From assembly GCA_964019335.1 (NCBI GenBank), contig OZ025707.1, positions 124,001 to 188,000 on the forward strand: a stretch of 64,000 bases of DNA. The letters are read 5' to 3'. Position 1 is the first letter of the stretch, and the number at the start of each line of letters is the position of its first letter. Positions 42,185 through 51,651 of this stretch are shown here, piece after piece. Under the pieces are notes generated by a model that was not told where the DNA came from, made no database searches, and saw only the letters and a program-made list of their open reading frames with translations. The stretch is from Diplonema japonicum. Lineage: Eukaryota; Protista; Euglenozoa: Diplonemea. The position numbers and the translations under genes are program-made.

Positions 42185-42262
42185 AAAATAAAGTGTTCAC
42201 CAGTGTGATGTTCGAGAGGCACAATTTTCGTACTCTCCTATTTTTTTTTTTTTAAATTTTTA

Positions 42263-44914
42263 CGGTACGGTGAGCACATCAAGAGCAACCCGATGGCACA
42301 CGCCCCCATCGACGCCAAGCTGCTGAAAGAGGTGATCGGTAAGAAAGCGGACAAGGGGGCATGCGGCGTGGACGGCTGGCGGATTGGTGAGTTGAAGCGC
42401 CTGCCGGCTCCGATCCTACAAGCGTTTGCGGACCTCTTCAACTTGATAGAGGAGACGGGCGAATGGCCGATGCAGGTCACGACGGCACTCGTATCCCTCA
42501 TCCCAAAGGGGGAAGGAACGGCACCTCTGGATCACCGACCGATCACAGTGACCAGTACCATTTACCGGCTGTGGGCAAGTGCACGACTGGTGCAGGTACT
42601 GAAATGGCAGGAGAGGTGGATCACACCACGACAACATGGTTTCAGGCCTAAACACAGCACGACCTCGGCGCTGATTGACTTATGCACGAAGCTAGAACTG
42701 GCACTGGTGGAGGACGAGCCGCTAGAAGGACTTGCATTGGACTTCAGGAAGTGCTTCGACCTGGTCCCGCAACAATTGTCGCACGAACTGATGCTGGCCC
42801 TGGGACTAGACCCAGCAATCGCACGAGCACTCCAAGGAATGTACGGGCAAATCTCGAGGAGATTCAAGTTCCCCATAGGAATAGGGGCCACCTTTAAAGC
42901 AACGAATGGGATACTCCAGGGGTGCCCGCTGTCGGTGATCATTATAAACGCCTTACTGGCGGTGATGATCAGGACAATCGAGAAGGAAGCACCTGGAACG
43001 GAGGTTTGTCCTATGCAGATGACACGTACCTTCTGGCAGAGTTGGAGAAGACCTTGCAGGCTGCGGTAAACGGAACTTTGGAGTTCTGCGGACTCACTGG
43101 GATGAAGCTTAACCCGGAGAAAACGGTAGCGTTTGGCACGAAGAAGGGCTTCCGGTCAAAAGTGCTGGGTGATAGGACAGTAACACAGAAAGGGAGAGAG
43201 GTCGCAGTCCCCTATAGAACAGTGACGTCGTTCAAGGCACTGGGCGTGATGGTGTTCACGAACAGGACAGGAACGACGTGGAACGAGCCAGCGACGGAAG
43301 CGGCCAACAAGCTAGACCGGCTGGGAGGGACAAGCCTGTCCTTCGAAACAAAAGGATACCTGATTGGAACATCGGTCTTGCCGTCGTGCCTCTACAGCAG
43401 CCCGTTCTCCCCTCCGAGTGATGAGGCGCTGAAGAAGCTAACAACGAGAGTGACCTGCAACCTATGGGGGCCTCACTTCCGAGGACGATCGCCTGCAGCG
43501 GTGAATACGGTTTTGCTGAAAGGACACATCAATGACCCGTTGTCCTACGTCATCTGTCACTCGCTAAAAGTGATATCGAGCGCGCTGGAAAGGACAGGTC
43601 TTGGACAGAGAGTGCGACAAATAGTGCAGAGGTACGGCTCACAGAGGACCCCCCTGGGACCGGTGGGGAATCTGATATGCAGGTGGATGCCGAGAATCGG
43701 ATGGGACTGGGAGAAGATGGAAATAGCCACAGAACTTGAGTGGCCCAAGCGAGGAAGCGCCTTCAGGGCGGCTGTAAGGGCAGCCAGGAGTGCGACACTA
43801 GCAACGGAACGGAAGACGGTCAGCGGACTCGGGGAAGGAGCAGATCCCAAAACGAATGACCTCTGGAGGACAGCTAAAGATCGCCATCTAGCTTTCTGTA
43901 TCAAGAGGGTAATTGCGGGAGGGATCCCCTACCTAAGTCCGTATGCCAGAGCAGGACCAAAGTGTGTACCCCCCACGAAGGAGGACGACGAGTCCGAGGG
44001 ACGGAGCGAAGAAGAGGAAGATCAAGACGAGCCAGCGGCGCATGAAGGACAAGACGAGTCGGGATTTGAATGTGACCTCTGCCCGACCAAGCATGCGGAC
44101 ACAGTAACACTGCTACGCCACCAGCTGTACGAGTGCCCGCCAGCACGAGAGGAGCTGATACGGGAGGAGATGGAACCACTGCGCGACAGGACGGGATGGC
44201 CGCTCTGCCTCGAGCTGCATGCCATCCTACCAAGGGGGAACGGGTTCGAACACCTGGAGAAGCTGCAGCGATACCTGGCAATGGTGGTGGAAAAGCGGGA
44301 CGAAGGGCTGATGCAGGCAGAAGGCGGCAACAAGAAGCTACCATGGGAGCGGGAAGTGACAGGCAAAGTGACCCCGGTACCGACGACAGCACAGCTGGGG
44401 ACAGTGGTGGGACTGCTGGAGCAATTCGGGGAACCACTACTGGAATGGATGGGAAAGCTGCGATGGGTGGAGGGCGACACCGACTCGGAGGTTTCGGCAG
44501 CTGAACTTGCACTCGACTTTGAGGAGACAACCGGAAAGTCACTGGGAGTCTACAACATGCAGAGGAAGGCACGCAGAATCAAGCTGTTGGTGGAGAGAGC
44601 CAACGCAGTGTGCAGAACGAGACGGATAAGACGCCCCTTCCCTGCGGACGGGGCAAAGAGGGTCAAGTCGCTCACAGCGATCGGAGGCAAGGCTGCAATA
44701 GGCTTTAACAGGAGACCGATCTTCGCATCAAGACAGACAGCGCAAAAGCTACAGGAGTTGAAAGGGACATACAAGAAAGAACGCGTGTCGAGACTACGAA
44801 AAGCTTTAAAGGCGACAATAGGAACGAAGGCTATGCTCCAGAAGGGGAGCATTAATAGATAGGAACTCACACCACAAGAGGCTGTCCTCGAGTGGGATTG
44901 TCTTTTACCATGAG
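42263..44914 (+). mobile_element. 5'-truncated non-LTR retrotransposon (LINE): RT + C-terminal CCHC finger, no poly(A) tail
   Basis: GVDGW, LIPKG..RPI, QHGFR, LDFRKCFD, GILQGCPLS, YADD (43012, after a 1-nt frameshift), CDLC..H...C. TSD TAAATTTTT(T)A at 42253-42262 and 44915-44925. Confidence 0.9.
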
Positions 44915-46281
44915 TAAATTTTTTATTTATTTATTTATTTATTATTTTTTTTTTTTTTTTGCATGAAGAAAAACAATCTATTGATACTGAATTGTTATTG
45001 CTAAAAAGAGTAGTGGTGGCATTGTAGGGCTTATCCTTCTACAGGTTAACCCCGGCTGTGCACAAACAGCAATCAACCGACTCTTTTTTTTTGGAAGAAG
45101 TAAAAGAGAAGAAAAAAAACTATAACTATCTTGTTTCAAATCGTACCTGTTTCTTTCTTGTAAATATGTCTCTCTCTTTTTTTTTTTTTTTTTTTTTTTT
45201 TCTTCTCTTTATTTATACTCGGTTGTTTTGTACACCAGGTACCCTTAACGTCATGAAAGACCCGAAGAGGGCGGGGTTCCTCAAGGACAGTGAAGAGACC
45301 ACCTTTTTATTAGCAAGCCATTCAAGGCAGCAGGAAGAAAACAAATGAAGTGTAATCAAATAGAAGAACAGAAATTTTGATAAATTTCGGTGTGCGGGTG
45401 GGTGCTCACCGTTGTAGAAAAGAAAAAAAAAATGAAAAAAGAAAGAAGTAGTAAACCCCCACAGGTGCATCTTCAGGAGTTTCAGTCTTGAAGAAGAGAA
45501 AAGAAAAGAAAAAAAGAAGAAAAGAAAAGGGGGAAAAAAAAAAAAGAAGAGAAGTGATTTCCTTTTGATCTTTCTTTTGTTGTTGTGTTTGATGTTTTTT
45601 TTTTTTTTTTTTTTTCTGATTAGAGTGGGTCTTTTTGTTTTTTCCCTCGCTCTCATCTTCTCTTGGAAAGAGAAAAATAAATAGAAAAGGGAGGGCCTCC
45701 GATGTTCAAAACCTAAATAGATTTTTTTTTTTTTTTTTAAACCAGGGGCAGAAGTTCGCCAAGAGTGTACAGTCCTGTTTCTCGCGGAAACAGAGAACCT
45801 ACCCCCCACCCCCACAGCAGCCGACCAATCAGACACAGCAGTGTGAAAAAAAAAAAAAAAAAAAAATGCCCTTATTTAGAACAAAGGGAGAAAGGGAAAA
45901 AAAAAAAGCAATTGTTTATCTTTCTTCTACTGCCTCCTTCTTTTGGGTACCAAAAAAGCTTTTCAGAAGGTCCAATACCGGCCAGGGGTGAGAGTGAGAG
46001 GACAACATGGAAGTCCGGTTCCCCGTGGTTTCATCCCCCATCCTCATTCTCGCTTTCCTCCCACCTCTTCATAGTTTACTGTTTCACGAGCGCTCCTTTT
46101 GTTGTTGTTGGACTTTAGGGTGAGCTGCTTATATTCCTTTCCTCCCGAGTTTCAGCCTTGTGAGCTGACCATCAATATTCAATAGATTTTTTTTTTTAAA
46201 CCGGGGGCGGAGGCTCACATTCAGTTTACTTTTTTCATTTTTATTTTTATTAGGTTTGTCCTCCACTTTGAGTTTTTATTT

Positions 46282-46327
46282 TTTCTGTACTTTATTGGTG
46301 TCCGACTATTTTTTCTGTACTTTATTG
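46282..46327 (+). other. Two copies of spliced-leader 3' sequence TTTCTGTACTTTATTG
   Basis: Positions 46282-46297 and 46312-46327 match the conserved 3' end of kinetoplastid/diplonemid SL exons, within a 30-nt tandem duplication. Confidence 0.8.
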
Positions 46328-46571
46328 GTGTCCGACCGTGCCAATAAAGTCAATAGGTAATACGGTTTGAAAAGAAGAAAAATAGAAGAAGAGTAAAAGA
46401 CGAGAAGACAGAGGGAAGAATCAATAGAAAGCGAAGAACTAGGAAGACAAATCAAAAGAAGGAAGCGAAGGACGAAAAAGACTGGAGGATAAAATCAAAG
46501 CGAAGCGAAAGGACGAGAAGACAATAACAACAGAGAAGGTAAAAACGACAGAAGGGATAGGTCGAAGCAGG

Positions 46572-48782
46572 ATGGGGTTCCAAGACCTCTCACGAGCGCT
46601 GAAGGGGTTTGGCATGACGGTGGAGGCGGGGAAGGACTACACCTTGTACGGAGTGCTAGCAAAGAAGTTAGCGATGAAGAAGGCAGAGGTGCAGGGCATG
46701 GTCCTGCAGGAACTGAGGCGGAACGAGGCGGAGTACACCCCACTCGTGGAAGGAGGAGACTTCGACGGCTTCTGTGTAGCACACAGCCGAGAAGGATCCG
46801 TCGCAGACAGCCTGTGCATCCAGGCCGCCGCAAGAGCACTGAAAGCCAACATTCATGTTGCAGTGCTTGCAGAGGGGTCCCTAGTAGTGCAGGTCGCTCA
46901 AGGCGGGAAAAAGAGGGTGCACATAGGGCACGACGGACAGGGAAGGTTCTGCTTTGTCGCTGAGCCCTTCGAAAAAGGGGTGCTGAAGACCGTTCAACGG
47001 AAGTTTGAGCTGGTGAAGGTGAGGATGCCAACGACTGACGGAGAACGCAAATCCTGGCGCACCCCCAGCAACAACAAGAAGAGAACGGCCCCAGTGAAGG
47101 AGGACGCCAAGAAAGTGTGGAAGCTAGAAAAGGACCAGTTTCAAGTCCCCTTCATCGAGATGGAGGACATGGCGAAGGGAAAGGACGGCGTGGTGCTACT
47201 GTCTGAGGAGAGTTTGTTGAAGGTGCAGGCAATGAAATGGTCAGGGATCAAGGGGGTGCTCACGAAGCAAGGGGGGGACGGAAGGCTGGAAGTCGACATC
47301 GTCGTCAAGACGGCAACCGAGTACAGCAACAAGACGATGTTCCTGACGGCGCTGAGCGGGAGAGTCGAGCTGGTTGCACCTACAGGCACGGTGGACATAG
47401 ACCTGGGGAAGATGTTCGTCAGAGCAGCAGTTGTGGTCGCGAAAGAGCACGCCTCGCCAGAACTCTGGGAACGAATGGTGAACGGACCGCACGGCCAGCT
47501 GAGGAAGATGGGCTGCCGGGGCGTCCTGAGGGTAGACAAGCACCTGAACGGGGTACAACGAGTCGACGCGCTGGTAACGCTCCCGAAGGAAAGGCTGGCG
47601 GGGATGCTGAAGGACTCAGGGAAGGACGGGGTCTTCCTCAAACTGAAAGACGGGAAGCTCGGGCCGGTTGCGTGGCTTCCAAAGGACACAACGCTGGACG
47701 TAGCGTTGGCGCAGGCAGAGGCGGAGGGTCTGGCGATGCGGGACGGTGACGGCCGCATCGGGATACGGACGACGGAGGAACGGAAGATCGCCATCCTCAA
47801 CAAGGCGATGGGAGAGGGTGCGAGGCTGGAGGGCCAACACGGGGAGCCGACGTGGAAGCTCACCGGGCTCTACTCGGATTGCAGCGAACAGCACGTGGAG
47901 AGGATCACCGCAAAGATGGGATGGAAGGGAGTACCAGTCAGAGGCGGATGGAGCAACGGGACACGGTGCTGGTACATCAGAGGAACGAAACCCCCGACCG
48001 ACAAGGTGAGGATCACGACCCCGACAGGGAAGATCCTAAACTGCAGAATCACGTCGGATACGTCGACCAGACCGATGGCCACCTTAAAGTCACACCCAGG
48101 GCAGACATGGAGCAGAAAACAGTCCTCGCCAGCTGGGGCCAAGTCCTATCTGAACGCGGCAGCAGGGGTTGCTAAGACTACTCCCACCCCTAGCACCAAG
48201 ACTCAGGCAACGAAGGATTCGCCAGACACAAAGGGAAAGGTGCAAAAGAACACGTCGATGGAAGACCGTCTAGGTGCGATCGAAAAAGCGATTCAGAAAC
48301 TCTCCGGCAGACCACTCAAGAAACCAAAGGAGTCGTCGGAGGTCCTGAAACTGAGAAAGGAAAATGACGAGCTACGCCAGGAGGTACGCCAACTACAGCA
48401 GGCGATGACGGAGCTAACAGCCCAACTGAAGGTATTCGTGAAGCAGGGGCAGAGGTCGGAAGAAGCATGCTCCCCGCAGTATGGCACGGAGATGGAAGGA
48501 ACAGAAGATGCTGAGTCTAGTTTGGGACCACCGCCTACGGGGACGGATACGGACATTGAAACTGAAGGGGGAGACGGGGACGAGGAACTGTTGGAGGAAG
48601 GAGACCTTACCATTTGCGTGACAGGAAAGACGCACGTCTTCAACGGCACGTACTCGACCTGGAGGGGAGCAGTGTGCAAGATATGCGATGAAGGGGTGCA
48701 CAAGAAGAACCAGGCCCAACAATGCATAATAAACGAGTGCAGGACCACCGTGTGCCGTAGTTGTATGGAAGGCGGGTGGTGA
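46572..48782 (+). CDS. LINE ORF1: N-terminal pseudo-OTU domain, central domain, coiled coil, C-terminal Cys/His zinc finger
   Basis: OTU-like pattern (GKDYTLYGVLA...ELRRNEAEYTPLVE.GDFDGF...CIQAAARALKANIHV...VHIGHDGQGRF); coiled coil LRKENDELRQEVRQLQQAMTELTAQL; H..CKIC...C...C...CRSC. Confidence 0.75.
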   Translation: MGFQDLSRALKGFGMTVEAGKDYTLYGVLAKKLAMKKAEVQGMVLQELRRNEAEYTPLVEGGDFDGFCVAHSREGSVADSLCIQAAARALKANIHVAVLAEGSLVVQVAQGGKKRVHIGHDGQGRFCFVAEPFEKGVLKTVQRKFELVKVRMPTTDGERKSWRTPSNNKKRTAPVKEDAKKVWKLEKDQFQVPFIEMEDMAKGKDGVVLLSEESLLKVQAMKWSGIKGVLTKQGGDGRLEVDIVVKTATEYSNKTMFLTALSGRVELVAPTGTVDIDLGKMFVRAAVVVAKEHASPELWERMVNGPHGQLRKMGCRGVLRVDKHLNGVQRVDALVTLPKERLAGMLKDSGKDGVFLKLKDGKLGPVAWLPKDTTLDVALAQAEAEGLAMRDGDGRIGIRTTEERKIAILNKAMGEGARLEGQHGEPTWKLTGLYSDCSEQHVERITAKMGWKGVPVRGGWSNGTRCWYIRGTKPPTDKVRITTPTGKILNCRITSDTSTRPMATLKSHPGQTWSRKQSSPAGAKSYLNAAAGVAKTTPTPSTKTQATKDSPDTKGKVQKNTSMEDRLGAIEKAIQKLSGRPLKKPKESSEVLKLRKENDELRQEVRQLQQAMTELTAQLKVFVKQGQRSEEACSPQYGTEMEGTEDAESSLGPPPTGTDTDIETEGGDGDEELLEEGDLTICVTGKTHVFNGTYSTWRGAVCKICDEGVHKKNQAQQCIINECRTTVCRSCMEGGW

Positions 48783-49242
48783 CTGACATATGATAAACGA
48801 CCCCCAACCCCGCCGAACGGCCAACACCCTAACCTAAACAATTTCATCAATCACAATTATAATCATCACCACACGACCACCCGGCCCCAGTCGAAGCACG
48901 ACCCGAGGTTGCTCTCCGACAGAGAATCGAAGCAACTGGTCGAGGATGGGGTGGAGCCAAACCCGGGACCCGGACCGGCGAACGACGAGTTGGAGAGACG
49001 CGGAACAGACGAGCTCACCCTATTCACGCACAATGGCGCGGCCCTAAACAACAGGCTGGGTGAATATGCTGGAGTCCTCCCAGACGTCTTCTGCATCCAG
49101 GAGACGGCGCTCACAGCCCAGACACAGCTGGAAGTGGAACGCGTGCTCAGAGATGACGAATGGGGCAGGCAGTACACCAGATTCTGGGGGAAACCGCAGC
49201 CAGGCAGGAGGGCAAACGAGATCTCGTCGCTAACAATCGCCA
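48783..49242 (+). CDS. LINE ORF2 5' fragment: linker, 2A-like peptide, AP endonuclease start
   Basis: In frame with ORF1 after a single TGA; LVEDGVEPNPGP; no ATG before the APE motifs. Confidence 0.75.
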
Positions 49243-49878
49243 GAGACAGTTAAATATTTTGTTGAAACTCTCGGTCAAGACGCAGGTGTCAAAACCAACG
49301 AGGGTTGGGCACCGTTTCAACTAGCAGCATCAAATGGCCAGCTGGAGACAGTAAAATATTTTGTTGAAACTCTCGGTCAAGACGCAGGTGTCAAAACCAA
49401 CGAGGGTTGGGCACCGGTTCATCTAGCAGCATCAAGTGGCCAGCTGGAGACAGTAAAATATCTTGTTGAAACTCTCGGTCAAGACGCAGGTGTCAAAAGC
49501 AACTACGGTAGGACACCGCTTCATGATGCAGCATCAAGTGGCCACCTGGAGACAGTTAAATATCTTGTTGAAAGCAGGAGAGGTGCGGCATCACGCACTC
49601 TTTCCGTTTCATGCAAAAAAAGAAAACTTGTTGAAACTCGCGGTCAAGTCGCAGGTGTCAAGTGCAACTTAGGTTGGACACCGCTTCATTATGCAGCATT
49701 CAAGGGCCATCTTGAGACGGTTAAATATCTTGTTGAAACTTGCGGTCAAGACGCAGGTGTCAAAAACAACGACGGTAGCACACCGGTTCATCTAGCGGCA
49801 CAGGAAAGCCATCTCGAAACAATAAAATATCTTGTTGAAGAAAGAATAAAAGAAAAAGACTGGCGACAAGAAGGATAG
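49243..49878 (+). pseudogene. 3' fragment of ankyrin-repeat gene
   Basis: Matches the 3' part of the copy at 53640-55328. Confidence 0.9.
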
Positions 49879-50910: not shown

Positions 50911-51651
50911 CCCTTATTTAGAACAAAAGGAGAAAGGGAAAAAAAAAAAGCAATTGTTTATCTTTCTTCTACTGCCTCCTTCTTTTGGGTACCAAAAAAG
51001 CTTTTCAGAAGGTCCAATACCGGTCAGGGGTGAGAGTGAGAGGACAACATGGAAGTCCGGTTCCCCGTGGTTTCATCCCCCATCCTCATTCTCGCTTTCC
51101 TCCCACCTCTTCATAGTTTACTGTTTCACGAGCGCTCCTTTTGTCGTTGTTGGACTTCAGGGTGAGCTGCTTATATTCCTTTCCTCCCGAGTTTCAGCCT
51201 TGTGAGCTGACCATCAATATTCAATAGATTTTTTTTTTTTAAACCGGGGGCGGAGGCTCACATTCAGTTTACTTTTTTCATTTTTATTTTTATTAGGTTT
51301 GTCCTCCACCTTGAGTTTTTATTTTTTATTATTTTTTTTTTCTTATTTTATTTTTTATTTCTATTCTTACTTTCATTTTTCATTTAATTTTACGTTTCAT
51401 CCCGCTACCAGTCGTGGTCGCCAACAGCTCGCTCACACCCTTCTCCAGGATCTCCCTCCAGCATCTTGTCCGCGCAGCTGTCCGCGGCGGCGTCGTAGGC
51501 AGCGGCCTTTGCTTCCAACTTCGGTCGCATTTCGGCTTCCGGTGTGGCTTGTGCCACTCGCTGTAGTCAGTCTCGGGGTACTCGGGATAGAGGCCAGTCC
51601 CCACGTCTCACACCCTTCTCGTAGGCAGCGGCCTTTGCTTCCAAAAACACA

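What the first reader, a model, noticed from the sequence alone, without database searches (positions are those of the whole stretch)
46277..46370. LINE whose 5' end is host spliced-leader sequence followed by an element-encoded anti-SL segment
Seen: the element starts with (TTT)CTGTACTTTATTG-GTGTCCGAC, duplicated as a 30-nt tandem repeat that includes 8 nt of host T-rich target. Fourteen nt after the SL end lies CCAATAAAGT (46341-46350), the exact reverse complement of ACTTTATTGG, i.e. the SL 3' end plus one G. ACGGTT (46362-46367) can pair with GACCGT in the hairpin loop (possible pseudoknot). Known: TTTCTGTACTTTATTG is the conserved 3' end of kinetoplastid/diplonemid SL exons, and in SL RNA it is followed by the GT donor. 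Inference, three options: (a) the LINE mRNA is trans-spliced and was reverse-transcribed into the SL, with the UTR evolved to fold back on the SL; (b) the element encodes its own SL mimic with a GT donor; (c) the anti-SL guides SL RNA capture. This differs from SLACS/CZAR/CRE, which insert into SL RNA genes; here the flank is an ordinary spacer.
Basis: partly seen in the sequence, partly recalled or inferred. Interest (0 to 1): 0.9.

Follow-up and report, generated by a model that had tools for sequence, protein, structure and literature searches.

The report
Spliced-leader-headed LINE with anti-leader pseudoknot
This stretch is the front end of a broken copy of a jumping gene (a LINE) of the marine protist Diplonema japonicum; the family carries the cell's own mRNA "spliced leader" as its first letters, folded against a matching element sequence into a conserved knot-like RNA structure, a 5' design I found in no paper, although this scan has met it repeatedly in this genome.

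Summary
Window 46285-49242 is a copy of a 6.9-kb APE/RT LINE, cut short at its 3' end and inserted in a T-run of a subtilase/ankyrin tandem array. Five paralogous spacers give the empty site.

The host is Diplonema japonicum. Its true SL RNA gene lies next to 5S rRNA, ends in CTGTACTTTATTG|GT, and has a different intron.

All 57 genomic copies of the post-leader module are preceded by leader sequence. Two sister lineages carry the full 37-39 nt. This lineage mostly carries the last 13-16 nt after a T-run.

- **Stem 1:** the leader's 3' end plus G pairs with CCAATAAAGT.
- **Stem 2:** GACCGT in the loop pairs with ACGGTT.
- **Conservation:** the module is 78-94% identical where the next 200 nt are 29-65% and ORF1 is 40-48%.

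The SL|GT junction is inherited as DNA. Relic-leader copies show that trans-splicing onto element transcripts also happens, but rarely.

How the RNA 5' end is made, and what the knot does, remain untested; no RNA reads were available. Earlier follow-ups of this scan already described SL-headed LINEs here. The pseudoknot test is new.

The parts
46285..49242 (+). Copy of a 6.9-kb APE/RT LINE (lineage 'G1a'), cut at its 3' end; 2958 bp are left
   Evidence: It is 99.8-100% identical to full copies on C20 (L052) and C15 (L053). Host homology stops at 46284 and resumes at 49243.
46277..46306 (+). First unit of a private 30-nt tandem duplication: 8 nt of host T-rich target, leader nt 26-38, then GTGTCCGAC
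   Evidence: The duplication is absent from the sister copies.
46307..46336 (+). Second unit of the 30-nt duplication, continuous with the rest of the element
46315..46327 (+). Spliced-leader remnant CTGTACTTTATTG, the last 13 nt of the host leader. The Ts before it may belong to the host or to the leader.
   Evidence: Identical to the exon end of the true SL RNA gene (L008:1503-1540:-).
46328..46329 (+). GT directly after the leader, in the position of the SL RNA splice donor
   Evidence: Invariant in all copies of the module.
46319..46328 (+). Stem 1, 5' strand: ACTTTATTGG (leader 3' end plus the G of GT)
   Evidence: Present in the MFE and centroid folds of four lineages. 94% of cells are paired.
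46341..46350 (+). Stem 1, 3' strand: CCAATAAAGT (anti-leader)
   Evidence: Variants CCGA and CTGA keep the pairing through G-U wobbles.
46334..46339 (+). Stem 2, 5' strand: GACCGT, in the loop of stem 1
46362..46367 (+). Stem 2, 3' strand: ACGGTT. Together with stem 1 it closes an H-type pseudoknot.
   Evidence: Family E has CCCCGT with ACGGGG, two compensatory pairs.
46572..48782 (+). ORF1, 736 aa, with a weak OTU-like protease match, a coiled coil and a Cys-rich C-terminus
   Evidence: 99% identical proteins are in the D. japonicum transcriptome.
48909..49242 (+). Start of ORF2 (2A-like NPGP motif, beginning of the APE domain), cut off by the deletion
44917..46284 (+). Host intergenic spacer of the subtilase/ankyrin array, ending in the T-rich target
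   Evidence: 96-99% identical to five other spacers in the window. The empty site is at 51327|51328.

Best explanation
SHOWN.
- The stretch is the 5' end of a dead copy of a diplonemid-specific APE/RT LINE. The copy is cut at both ends.
- In this LINE group the host spliced leader is a DNA-encoded, inherited first segment of the element.
- The leader is always followed by GT and by a conserved module of about 45 nt.
- In that module an anti-leader pairs with the leader's last 9 nt plus the G of GT (stem 1).
- Six loop bases pair with a downstream hexamer (stem 2). Together the two stems form an H-type pseudoknot that buries the SL|GU junction.
- The elements end in a T-run, not poly(A). They insert into T-runs in the same direction as the host genes.

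INFERRED.
- The leader entered the lineage when a leader-bearing element RNA was reverse-transcribed to its very end. Since then it has been kept as a working part of the 5' UTR.
- The RNA that is copied starts at leader nt 1-2. The 5' ends are sharp, and about 40% of full copies carry two extra Cs that are not templated.
- The existing DNA copies offer no AG at the junction. The simplest way to remake this end each cycle is therefore initiation at the first leader nucleotide from a promoter inside the element. L1Tc Pr77 of trypanosomes does this, and it binds the SL RNA gene factors TBP and SNAP50.
- The pseudoknot keeps the SL|GU junction from being used as a trans-splicing donor. It probably also marks the 5' end for the element's own proteins.
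- In the window's lineage most copies lost leader nt 1-22 at integration, by joining at the leader's TTT to the T-run of the target. Alternatively they descend from a master that was already truncated.
For: **LINE identity.** RVT_1 and Exo_endo_phos domains in ORF2. Sister copies share one 3' end and have random 5' truncations. The neighbouring copy has an 8-bp T-rich target duplication.

**Host leader and true SL RNA gene.** The gene has a different intron, lies next to 5S rRNA, and has only 9 copies in the assembly.

**Leader-headed copies.**
- 254 genomic hits to leader end + GT.
- All 57 copies of the 16-mer module (at most 1 mismatch) carry leader sequence upstream.
- 5' end classes: G1 has 14 copies cut at nt 23-26 and 2 full; G2 has 14 full; G3 has 22 full; E has 3 cut and 1 full.

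**Structure.**
- Stem 1 appears in the MFE and centroid folds of G1, G2, G3 and E.
- Stem 1 is 94% paired, against 22-57% when the partner is slid. Its only recurrent changes keep G-U wobbles.
- Stem 2 is 97% paired and has two compensatory pairs. 2 of 500 shuffles reach this, and slid controls give 9-52%.
- A perfect complement in family E is expected by chance at about 0.001. It is present in 8 of 9 E copies read.

**Constraint.** The module is 78-94% identical between lineages, while the next 200 nt are 29-65%. ORF1 is 40-48% identical. Family E ORF1 is barely similar.

**Inherited junction and minority trans-splicing.** Relic forms are SL|TTTCTG..., SL|CTACAG... and SL|TAACGG. Each junction lies right after an AG of the parent sequence.

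**Expression.** D. japonicum Trinity proteins are 99-100% identical to ORF1 and ORF2.

**Precedent.** Pr77 is an internal Pol II promoter with CGTG at +25 to +28 and binds TBP and SNAP50 (PMC8190864).
Against: - No RNA 5' ends could be examined. The only public runs are assembled contigs of unknown type. Initiation at leader nt 1 is therefore inference only.
- Folding energies are not better than shuffles (z -0.9 to -1.65). The case for the structure rests on conservation.
- The stem 2 covariation is in effect one evolutionary event (G lineages versus E). One E copy and one contig of a related organism break the stem.
- All 8 copies of the window's own sub-lineage lack leader nt 1-22 yet are 96-100% identical. 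Either the full leader is dispensable or the master was not assembled.
- The bimodal 5' ends are not explained by any single model.
- Some copies join the leader to positions that no AG precedes. This points to reverse-transcriptase template jumps as a further route.
Confidence: 0.55

Rival explanations
1. Retro-capture in every generation. The element RNA is made by read-through transcription and trans-spliced like any mRNA. The leader in the DNA is only a record of that, and the anti-leader evolved afterwards.
For: - Relic-leader copies have junctions exactly after AGs inside the encoded leader or the UTR.
- The elements sit just downstream of T-runs, which are polypyrimidine tracts, in gene orientation.
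- Other apparent retro-copies consist of leader + short UTR + ATG.
- The same extra CC prefix occurs on relic-leader copies, whose outer leader must come from SL RNA, and on standard copies.
Against: - The standard junction is TTG|GT, not AG|.
- All 57 module copies already contain the leader. Trans-splicing onto them should yield relic forms, yet these were only about 5 of the roughly 80 non-redundant leader-headed ends I classified and about 10 genome-wide.
- No leader-less master exists.
- The window's lineage propagates, or at least accumulates, with a cut leader.
Confidence: 0.2
2. SL-RNA-gene mimic. The whole element is built like a giant SL RNA transcription unit, with leader exon + GU + stem at the front and a T-tract at the end. 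It would be initiated, capped and terminated by the SL RNA machinery, and might even act as a leader donor.
For: - Stem 1 copies the donor-proximal part of the exon-intron stem of the true SL RNA (duplex -8.1 kcal/mol there).
- GT is invariant.
- The 3' end is a T-run, like the SL RNA gene terminator.
- The sense strand has 15% T and no run of 5 or more Ts in 6.9 kb.
- Pr77 sets a precedent for recruiting SL RNA gene factors.
Against: - No upstream SL-gene promoter travels with the element; the flanks are unrelated T-runs.
- No intron similarity beyond the anti-leader, and no clear Sm site.
- The lack of T-runs is not significant beyond base composition (0 observed, 0.4 expected).
- Truncated copies lack the cap-proximal 22 nt.
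- Donating the leader would behead the element's own RNA.
Confidence: 0.2
3. Template jump or guided capture. Reverse transcriptase reaches the 5' end of a leader-less element RNA and jumps to SL RNA or to another leader-bearing RNA, perhaps held in place by the anti-leader.
For: - The leader is joined to several positions that no AG precedes in families A, C and D.
- One locus (L002) carries a nearly complete unspliced SL RNA, exon plus about 85 nt of intron, fused to another repeat that elsewhere starts with the leader alone.
Against: - A jump to SL RNA should bring the intron along, as in L002. The standard copies have none.
- The junction is invariant to the nucleotide in 57 copies.
- Reverse transcriptase would displace anything paired to the anti-leader before it reached the end.
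- Nothing supports an RNA that ends exactly at the leader's last G, other than the short-lived splicing intermediate.
Confidence: 0.08
4. Chance resemblance or assembly artefact.
For: None beyond the short length of the matches.
Against: - Shuffles expect 0.07 and 0.14 matches where 2 and 3 are seen.
- Dozens of independent loci show the same arrangement.
- The same module occurs in contigs of four independent studies and of a related organism.
Confidence: 0.01

Closest known systems
L1Tc/ingi LINEs of trypanosomatids with the Pr77 'hallmark'
   Same: - An APE/RT LINE of a trans-splicing euglenozoan.
- A 2A-like peptide sits in front of the APE-RT protein. The 2A peptide of L1Tc is recalled from memory (Heras et al. 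2006).
- A conserved, structured first 50-80 nt defines the RNA 5' end.
- Pr77 binds the SL RNA gene factors TBP and SNAP50 and has CGTG at +25 to +28 (PMC8190864). Here an invariant CGTG lies at +26 to +29 counted from leader nt 23.
   Different: - Pr77 has no leader sequence and is also an HDV-like ribozyme.
- Here the head is the host leader itself. No ribozyme family matches, and the topology lacks a P3 stem.
- No RNase H domain was detected.
- The nearest relatives are all diplonemid proteins, 35-47% identical in D. papillatum.
SLACS / CZAR / CRE1-2 (spliced-leader-associated retrotransposons)
   Same: Retrotransposons of Euglenozoa that are physically linked to spliced-leader sequence.
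   Different: - Those elements insert site-specifically between nt 11 and 12 of the leader exon of SL RNA genes, and they carry a restriction-like endonuclease (from memory).
- Here the leader is the element's own first segment, the targets are T-runs anywhere in the genome, and the endonuclease is APE-type.
Relic spliced leaders of dinoflagellate retrogenes (e.g. PMC5585692, PMC6050394)
   Same: - A DNA-encoded leader at the 5' end of retro-copied RNA.
- Stacked relic leaders cut at the leader's own AG; these are seen here in sister copies.
   Different: - There the leader is a passive scar on host retrogenes.
- Here it heads autonomous LINE families, and it is paired with a conserved, co-varying element sequence.
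5' pseudoknot of R2 element RNA
   Same: A conserved pseudoknot in the 5' region of a non-LTR element RNA, thought to be bound by the element's protein (from memory: Kierzek et al. 2009).
   Different: - R2 is site-specific in rDNA and is co-transcribed with rRNA.
- One strand of the knot here is host leader sequence.
Stem-loop I of the host SL RNA
   Same: The leader's 3' end and the splice donor are paired with a downstream CAATAAA-type segment.
   Different: - The rest of the intron, the T-tract terminator context and the 5S rRNA linkage are absent from the element.
- The element adds a second helix.

Membership tests
APE-type non-LTR retrotransposon (LINE) | Reverse transcriptase domain | tested here: met
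   RVT_1 has E 4e-21 in the full sister copy L052. The window copy is cut before it.
APE-type non-LTR retrotransposon (LINE) | Apurinic-type endonuclease N-terminal to the RT | tested here: met
   Exo_endo_phos has E 6e-13.
APE-type non-LTR retrotransposon (LINE) | Common 3' end, variable 5' truncation, target-site duplication | tested here: met
   About 45 sister copies end at one point and have scattered 5' starts. The copy at 42262-44916 has an 8-bp duplication. The tail is a T-run, not poly(A).
SLACS/CZAR/CRE clade | Site-specific insertion inside the leader exon of SL RNA genes | tested here: not met
   Insertions lie in unrelated T-rich spacers. The empty site is known from paralogues.
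SLACS/CZAR/CRE clade | Restriction-like (not APE) endonuclease | tested here: not met
   An APE domain is present.
ingi/L1Tc clade | Pr77 hallmark with HDV-like ribozyme at the 5' end | tested here: not met
   No Rfam match at E up to 1 on four 5' ends. The two helices leave no room for a P3 stem. Pr77 itself was not aligned, because no reference sequence was at hand.
ingi/L1Tc clade | RNase H domain after the RT; RT phylogeny within the clade | tested here: inconclusive
   Pfam finds no RNase H. No tree with reference clades was built. The nearest proteins are all diplonemid.
SL RNA gene | Leader exon + GT + SL-type intron, T-tract terminator about 100 nt downstream, tandem or 5S-linked arrangement | tested here: not met
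   The true gene (L008, L030) has a different intron and a terminator, and only 9 copies exist. Here an ORF of 736 aa follows.
Leader-tagged retro-copy (dinoflagellate-type relic SL) | Genomic leader at the 5' end of a retro-copied RNA; relic leaders cut at the leader's AG | tested here: met
   Met for the family: a full leader in G2 and G3 copies, and relic forms in L014, L023, L080, L091 and L098. The window copy itself has only a 13-16-nt remnant.

The most novel reading that the evidence does not exclude
The LINE is a self-contained imitation of an SL RNA gene. Its first 38-39 nt are the leader, followed by a GU and a stem like that of SL RNA. Transcription would then start at leader nt 1 and the RNA would receive the leader-type cap. 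A T-tract would end the unit. In this way the element would make a capped, translatable RNA without trans-splicing, in a cell where every other mRNA depends on it. The pseudoknot would keep this RNA from being consumed as a leader donor.
Probability: 0.2. Interest if true: 0.9.

Novelty: new variant of a known kind. Interest (0 to 1): 0.75.

Why it matters
In Euglenozoa every mRNA obtains its cap from the spliced leader. How a retrotransposon gets a translatable, full-length RNA there is known only for the trypanosomatid Pr77 system.

Here several diverged LINE lineages of a diplonemid have made the host leader a heritable part of themselves. They have also evolved a co-varying partner sequence that knots it. 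This raises several points:

- It offers a second, different solution to the same problem.
- It links retrotransposition to trans-splicing.
- It supplies natural tags (full, cut and stacked leaders) that record how each copy was made.
- It yields a short RNA element, about 60 nt, whose function can be tested directly in the transformable relative D. papillatum.
- Leader sequences in diplonemid genomes cannot be taken as SL RNA genes. In this assembly there are 9 true genes against about 250 leader-headed retro-copies.

Tried and rejected
- **HDV-like or other known ribozyme or RNA family.** Rfam gave no match at E up to 1 on four 5' ends. The strand order leaves one base between stem 2 and stem 1, so there is no P3.
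- **RNA evidence.** The run search found only assembled contigs of unknown type. Laying them showed the module in four studies and in a related organism, but no starts, ends or joints.
- **Relatives in metagenomes.** One pattern scan gave two chance matches without leader context.
- **Relatives in D. papillatum.** As a result, families A, C, D and E were studied only on the 1.5 kb already held.
- **T-run avoidance as a sign of T-tract termination.** No run of 5 or more Ts in 6.9 kb, but only 0.4 is expected at 15% T. Not significant.
- **MAFFT alignments.** They misplaced family E twice. Stem 1 was counted on A2 and stem 2 on A3, where the relevant columns are in register. The A of ACGG was left out of the stem 2 count for that reason.
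- **Thermodynamic support.** Weak.
- **GT after the leader.** My first pattern demanded GT. Without it, about 57 further leader ends are followed by something else. The GT rule therefore holds for three independent high-copy groups (A; C/D; E/G), not for all leader-tagged copies.
Full report
**What is at the coordinates.**

- CTGTACTTTATTG stands at 46285-46297 and 46315-46327.
- The two occurrences belong to a perfect 30-nt tandem duplication (46277-46306 and 46307-46336). It includes 8 nt of host target.
- CCAATAAAGT at 46341-46350 is the exact complement of ACTTTATTGG at 46319-46328.
- GACCGT (46334-46339) can pair with ACGGTT (46362-46367).
- Shuffles of the window expect 0.07 and 0.14 matches for the two motifs.

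**Host and setting.**

The window belongs to a 62.5-Mb assembly. Proteins 99-100% identical to both ORFs of the element are in the EukProt transcriptome of Diplonema japonicum. A 62.3-Mb genome note exists for strain YPF1604 (PMC13598402); it mentions neither leaders nor retrotransposons.

The local host sequence is a tandem array of subtilase and ankyrin-repeat genes.
- Five paralogous spacers match the flank up to exactly 46284 and then continue with host sequence (51327|51328 in the next unit). The 5' boundary of the insertion is therefore known to the base, apart from shared Ts.
- Host homology resumes at 49243, inside an ankyrin repeat. About 3.4 kb of host sequence and the last 3.9 kb of the element are missing, with no microhomology at the joint.

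**The element.**

Full copies on C20 and C15 (L052, L053) are 6.9 kb long.
- ORF1 has 736 aa, with a weak OTU-like match.
- The ORF2 frame has 1408 aa. It starts with a 2A-like NPGP motif, followed by an APE endonuclease and a reverse transcriptase.
- A sister lineage (L049-L051) has ORF1 40% and ORF2 62% identical. A 5'-truncated copy of it lies at 42262-44916, with an 8-bp T-rich target duplication.
- The elements end in a T-run, not poly(A), and insert into T-runs in gene orientation.
- The nearest proteins elsewhere are all diplonemid.

**The host leader.**

Searching the genome for the leader end plus GT gave 254 hits.

The true SL RNA gene has these features:
- It lies next to a 5S rRNA gene.
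- Its exon is L008:1503-1540:-.
- Its intron begins GTACCCAATC.
- It ends in a T-tract.
- It occurs only 9 times in the assembly.

Its intron pairs with the exon through CAATAAA and TACAGAA segments. The other hits are retro-copies of a few families, each starting with the leader: A, C/D, E, and G1, G2, G3 (my labels). C/D encodes an AlkB-like domain and points outward at contig ends. Earlier follow-ups of this scan identify it as a telomeric LINE.

I fetched every copy of the 16-mer GACCGTGCCAATAAAG with at most one mismatch: 56 loci plus the window. All are preceded by leader sequence. The lengths are bimodal.

| Lineage | Full leader (37-39 nt) | Cut at leader nt 23-26 | Other |
|---|---|---|---|
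| G1 (window lineage) | 2 | 14 | none |
| G2 | 14 | none | 1 relic-leader copy |
| G3 | 22 | none | 2 relic-leader copies, 1 cut elsewhere |
| E | 1 | 3 | none |

- In the cut copies a host T-run runs into the leader's TTT.
- All 8 copies of the window's own sub-lineage are cut.
- In the sister sub-lineage, cut and full copies are 99.7-99.9% identical.
- About 40% of full G3 copies have two extra Cs before the leader. So do relic-leader copies, whose outer leader must come from SL RNA.

**Junctions.**
- The standard junction is TTG|GT in every copy. No copy has an AG there, and none lacks the leader.
- Relic forms are SL|TTTCTGTAC..., SL|CTACAG... and SL|TAACGG. Each junction lies right after an AG of the parent sequence. 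Trans-splicing onto element transcripts therefore occurs, and such RNAs are retro-copied, but these are a small minority.
- Other families also show the leader joined where no AG precedes.
- One locus (L002) has a nearly whole unspliced SL RNA fused to another repeat. This points to occasional template jumps.
- About 57 leader ends are followed by something other than GT, including apparent retro-copies of ordinary mRNAs.

**The structure.**
- *Stem 1* is in the MFE and centroid folds of G1, G2, G3 and E, although the energies do not beat shuffles. On alignment A2 it is 94% paired, against 22-57% for slid partners. Its recurrent changes (CCAA to CCGA or CTGA) keep G-U wobbles.
- *Stem 2* on alignment A3 is 97% paired. 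In family E the two pairs G-U and A-U are both replaced by C-G. Only 2 of 500 shuffles reach this, and slid controls give 9-52%.
- Eight of nine E copies read have ACGGGG opposite CCCCGT. A perfect match is expected by chance in about 0.1% of shuffles. Swapping partners between families would break two pairs.
- The linker between the stems keeps its length in the G lineages (mostly 10-11 nt; 5-14 nt in family E) but not its sequence.
- The 50 nt after the leader are 78-94% identical between G lineages, while the next 200 nt are 29-65%. ORF1 is 40-48% identical. Family E ORF1 is barely recognisable.
- This is good evidence for a constrained H-type pseudoknot. The caveat is that the stem 2 covariation is one event. 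One E copy (L012) and one contig of a related organism break the stem.

**Mechanism.**

Shown:
- The leader and its GT junction are inherited as DNA.
- The template RNA ends at leader nt 1-2.
- Trans-splicing at internal AGs is a side route.

Inferred:
- The RNA 5' end is made by initiation at the first leader nucleotide from a promoter inside the element. The precedent is L1Tc Pr77, an internal Pol II promoter that yields unspliced translatable RNA, has CGTG at +25 to +28, and binds the SL RNA gene factors TBP and SNAP50 (PMC8190864).
- Here an invariant CGTG lies at +26 to +29 from leader nt 23, close to where the cut copies begin. This may be coincidence.
- The knot buries the SL|GU junction, which otherwise looks exactly like the SL RNA donor.

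Why one lineage is mostly cut at nt 23-26 is unexplained. Two possibilities are microhomology between the leader's TTT and the T-run target, and a second start site.

- No RNA reads were available.
- The metagenome scan found nothing useful.

**Known or new.**

The papers I could search describe these related things:
- relic leaders on dinoflagellate retrogenes;
- Pr77;
- annotation labels such as 'SLACS' in D. papillatum (PMC10161547).

None describes a LINE headed by the leader with an anti-leader. This scan's earlier follow-ups on other windows of this genome reached the same general reading. The pseudoknot had been proposed only by first readers and is tested here.

Noticed in passing
window 42262-44916 (+): A 5'-truncated copy (2655 bp: RT C-terminal part and 3' UTR) of the sister LINE lineage, 99.8% identical to full copies on C18 and C95. 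It lies in the T-rich spacer after an ankyrin gene, with an approximately 8-bp T-rich target duplication and no poly(A).
   Followed up: partly
window about 19000-64000: The host sequence is a tandem array of subtilase (S8) plus 13-repeat ankyrin genes, with units of 5.0-5.5 kb in the units measured. The spacers are 96-99% identical, which provides ready-made empty sites for both insertions.
   Followed up: partly
L002 (G000:C2:150579): A nearly complete unspliced SL RNA (exon plus about 85 nt of intron) is fused to a repeat that elsewhere (C27:396676, C30:604198) begins with the leader exon alone. It looks like a reverse-transcriptase jump onto SL RNA, in the manner of U6-L1 chimeras.
   Followed up: no
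many loci, e.g. L058, L066, L078, L087-L089, L091, L098: Two extra Cs, templated by nothing, stand between the target T-run and the first leader base in about 40% of full-length G3 copies. They also occur on relic-leader copies. They may be a trace of copying the modified cap end.
   Followed up: partly
contig ends (e.g. C5:513, C6:1906, C2:1000468, C15:777140): Families C and D (leader + GTCGT...) cluster within a few kb of contig ends and always point outward. Their first ORF has an AlkB-like 2OG-Fe(II) oxygenase domain. Shorter versions join the leader to ...GATCCCCTCCCCCC at several neighbouring positions.
   Followed up: no
L052 (C20) and L050 (C18), whole elements: The sense strand is very poor in T (15%, against 29% A and 32% G) and has no run of 5 or more Ts in 6.9 kb, while the element both starts after and ends in a T-run.
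   Followed up: partly
window 48760-49242; L052:3508-3700: ORF1 ends in a stop, and the ORF2 frame opens about 125 nt later with a 2A-like DGVEPNPGP motif. Another finding of this scan proposes UGA readthrough here. I did not test that.
   Followed up: no
run X1 (organism A), contigs laid on 46312-46349 and 46686-47400: A related organism carries the same leader + module, and an ORF1 that differs at about 7% of bases. One of its contigs has CAG instead of CGG in stem 2.
   Followed up: no
G000, whole assembly: Only 9 true SL RNA genes are assembled, two pairs of them about 350 bp apart and one beside 5S rRNA. This compares with about 250 leader-headed retro-copies, so leader hits in this genome are mostly not SL RNA genes.
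   Followed up: partly
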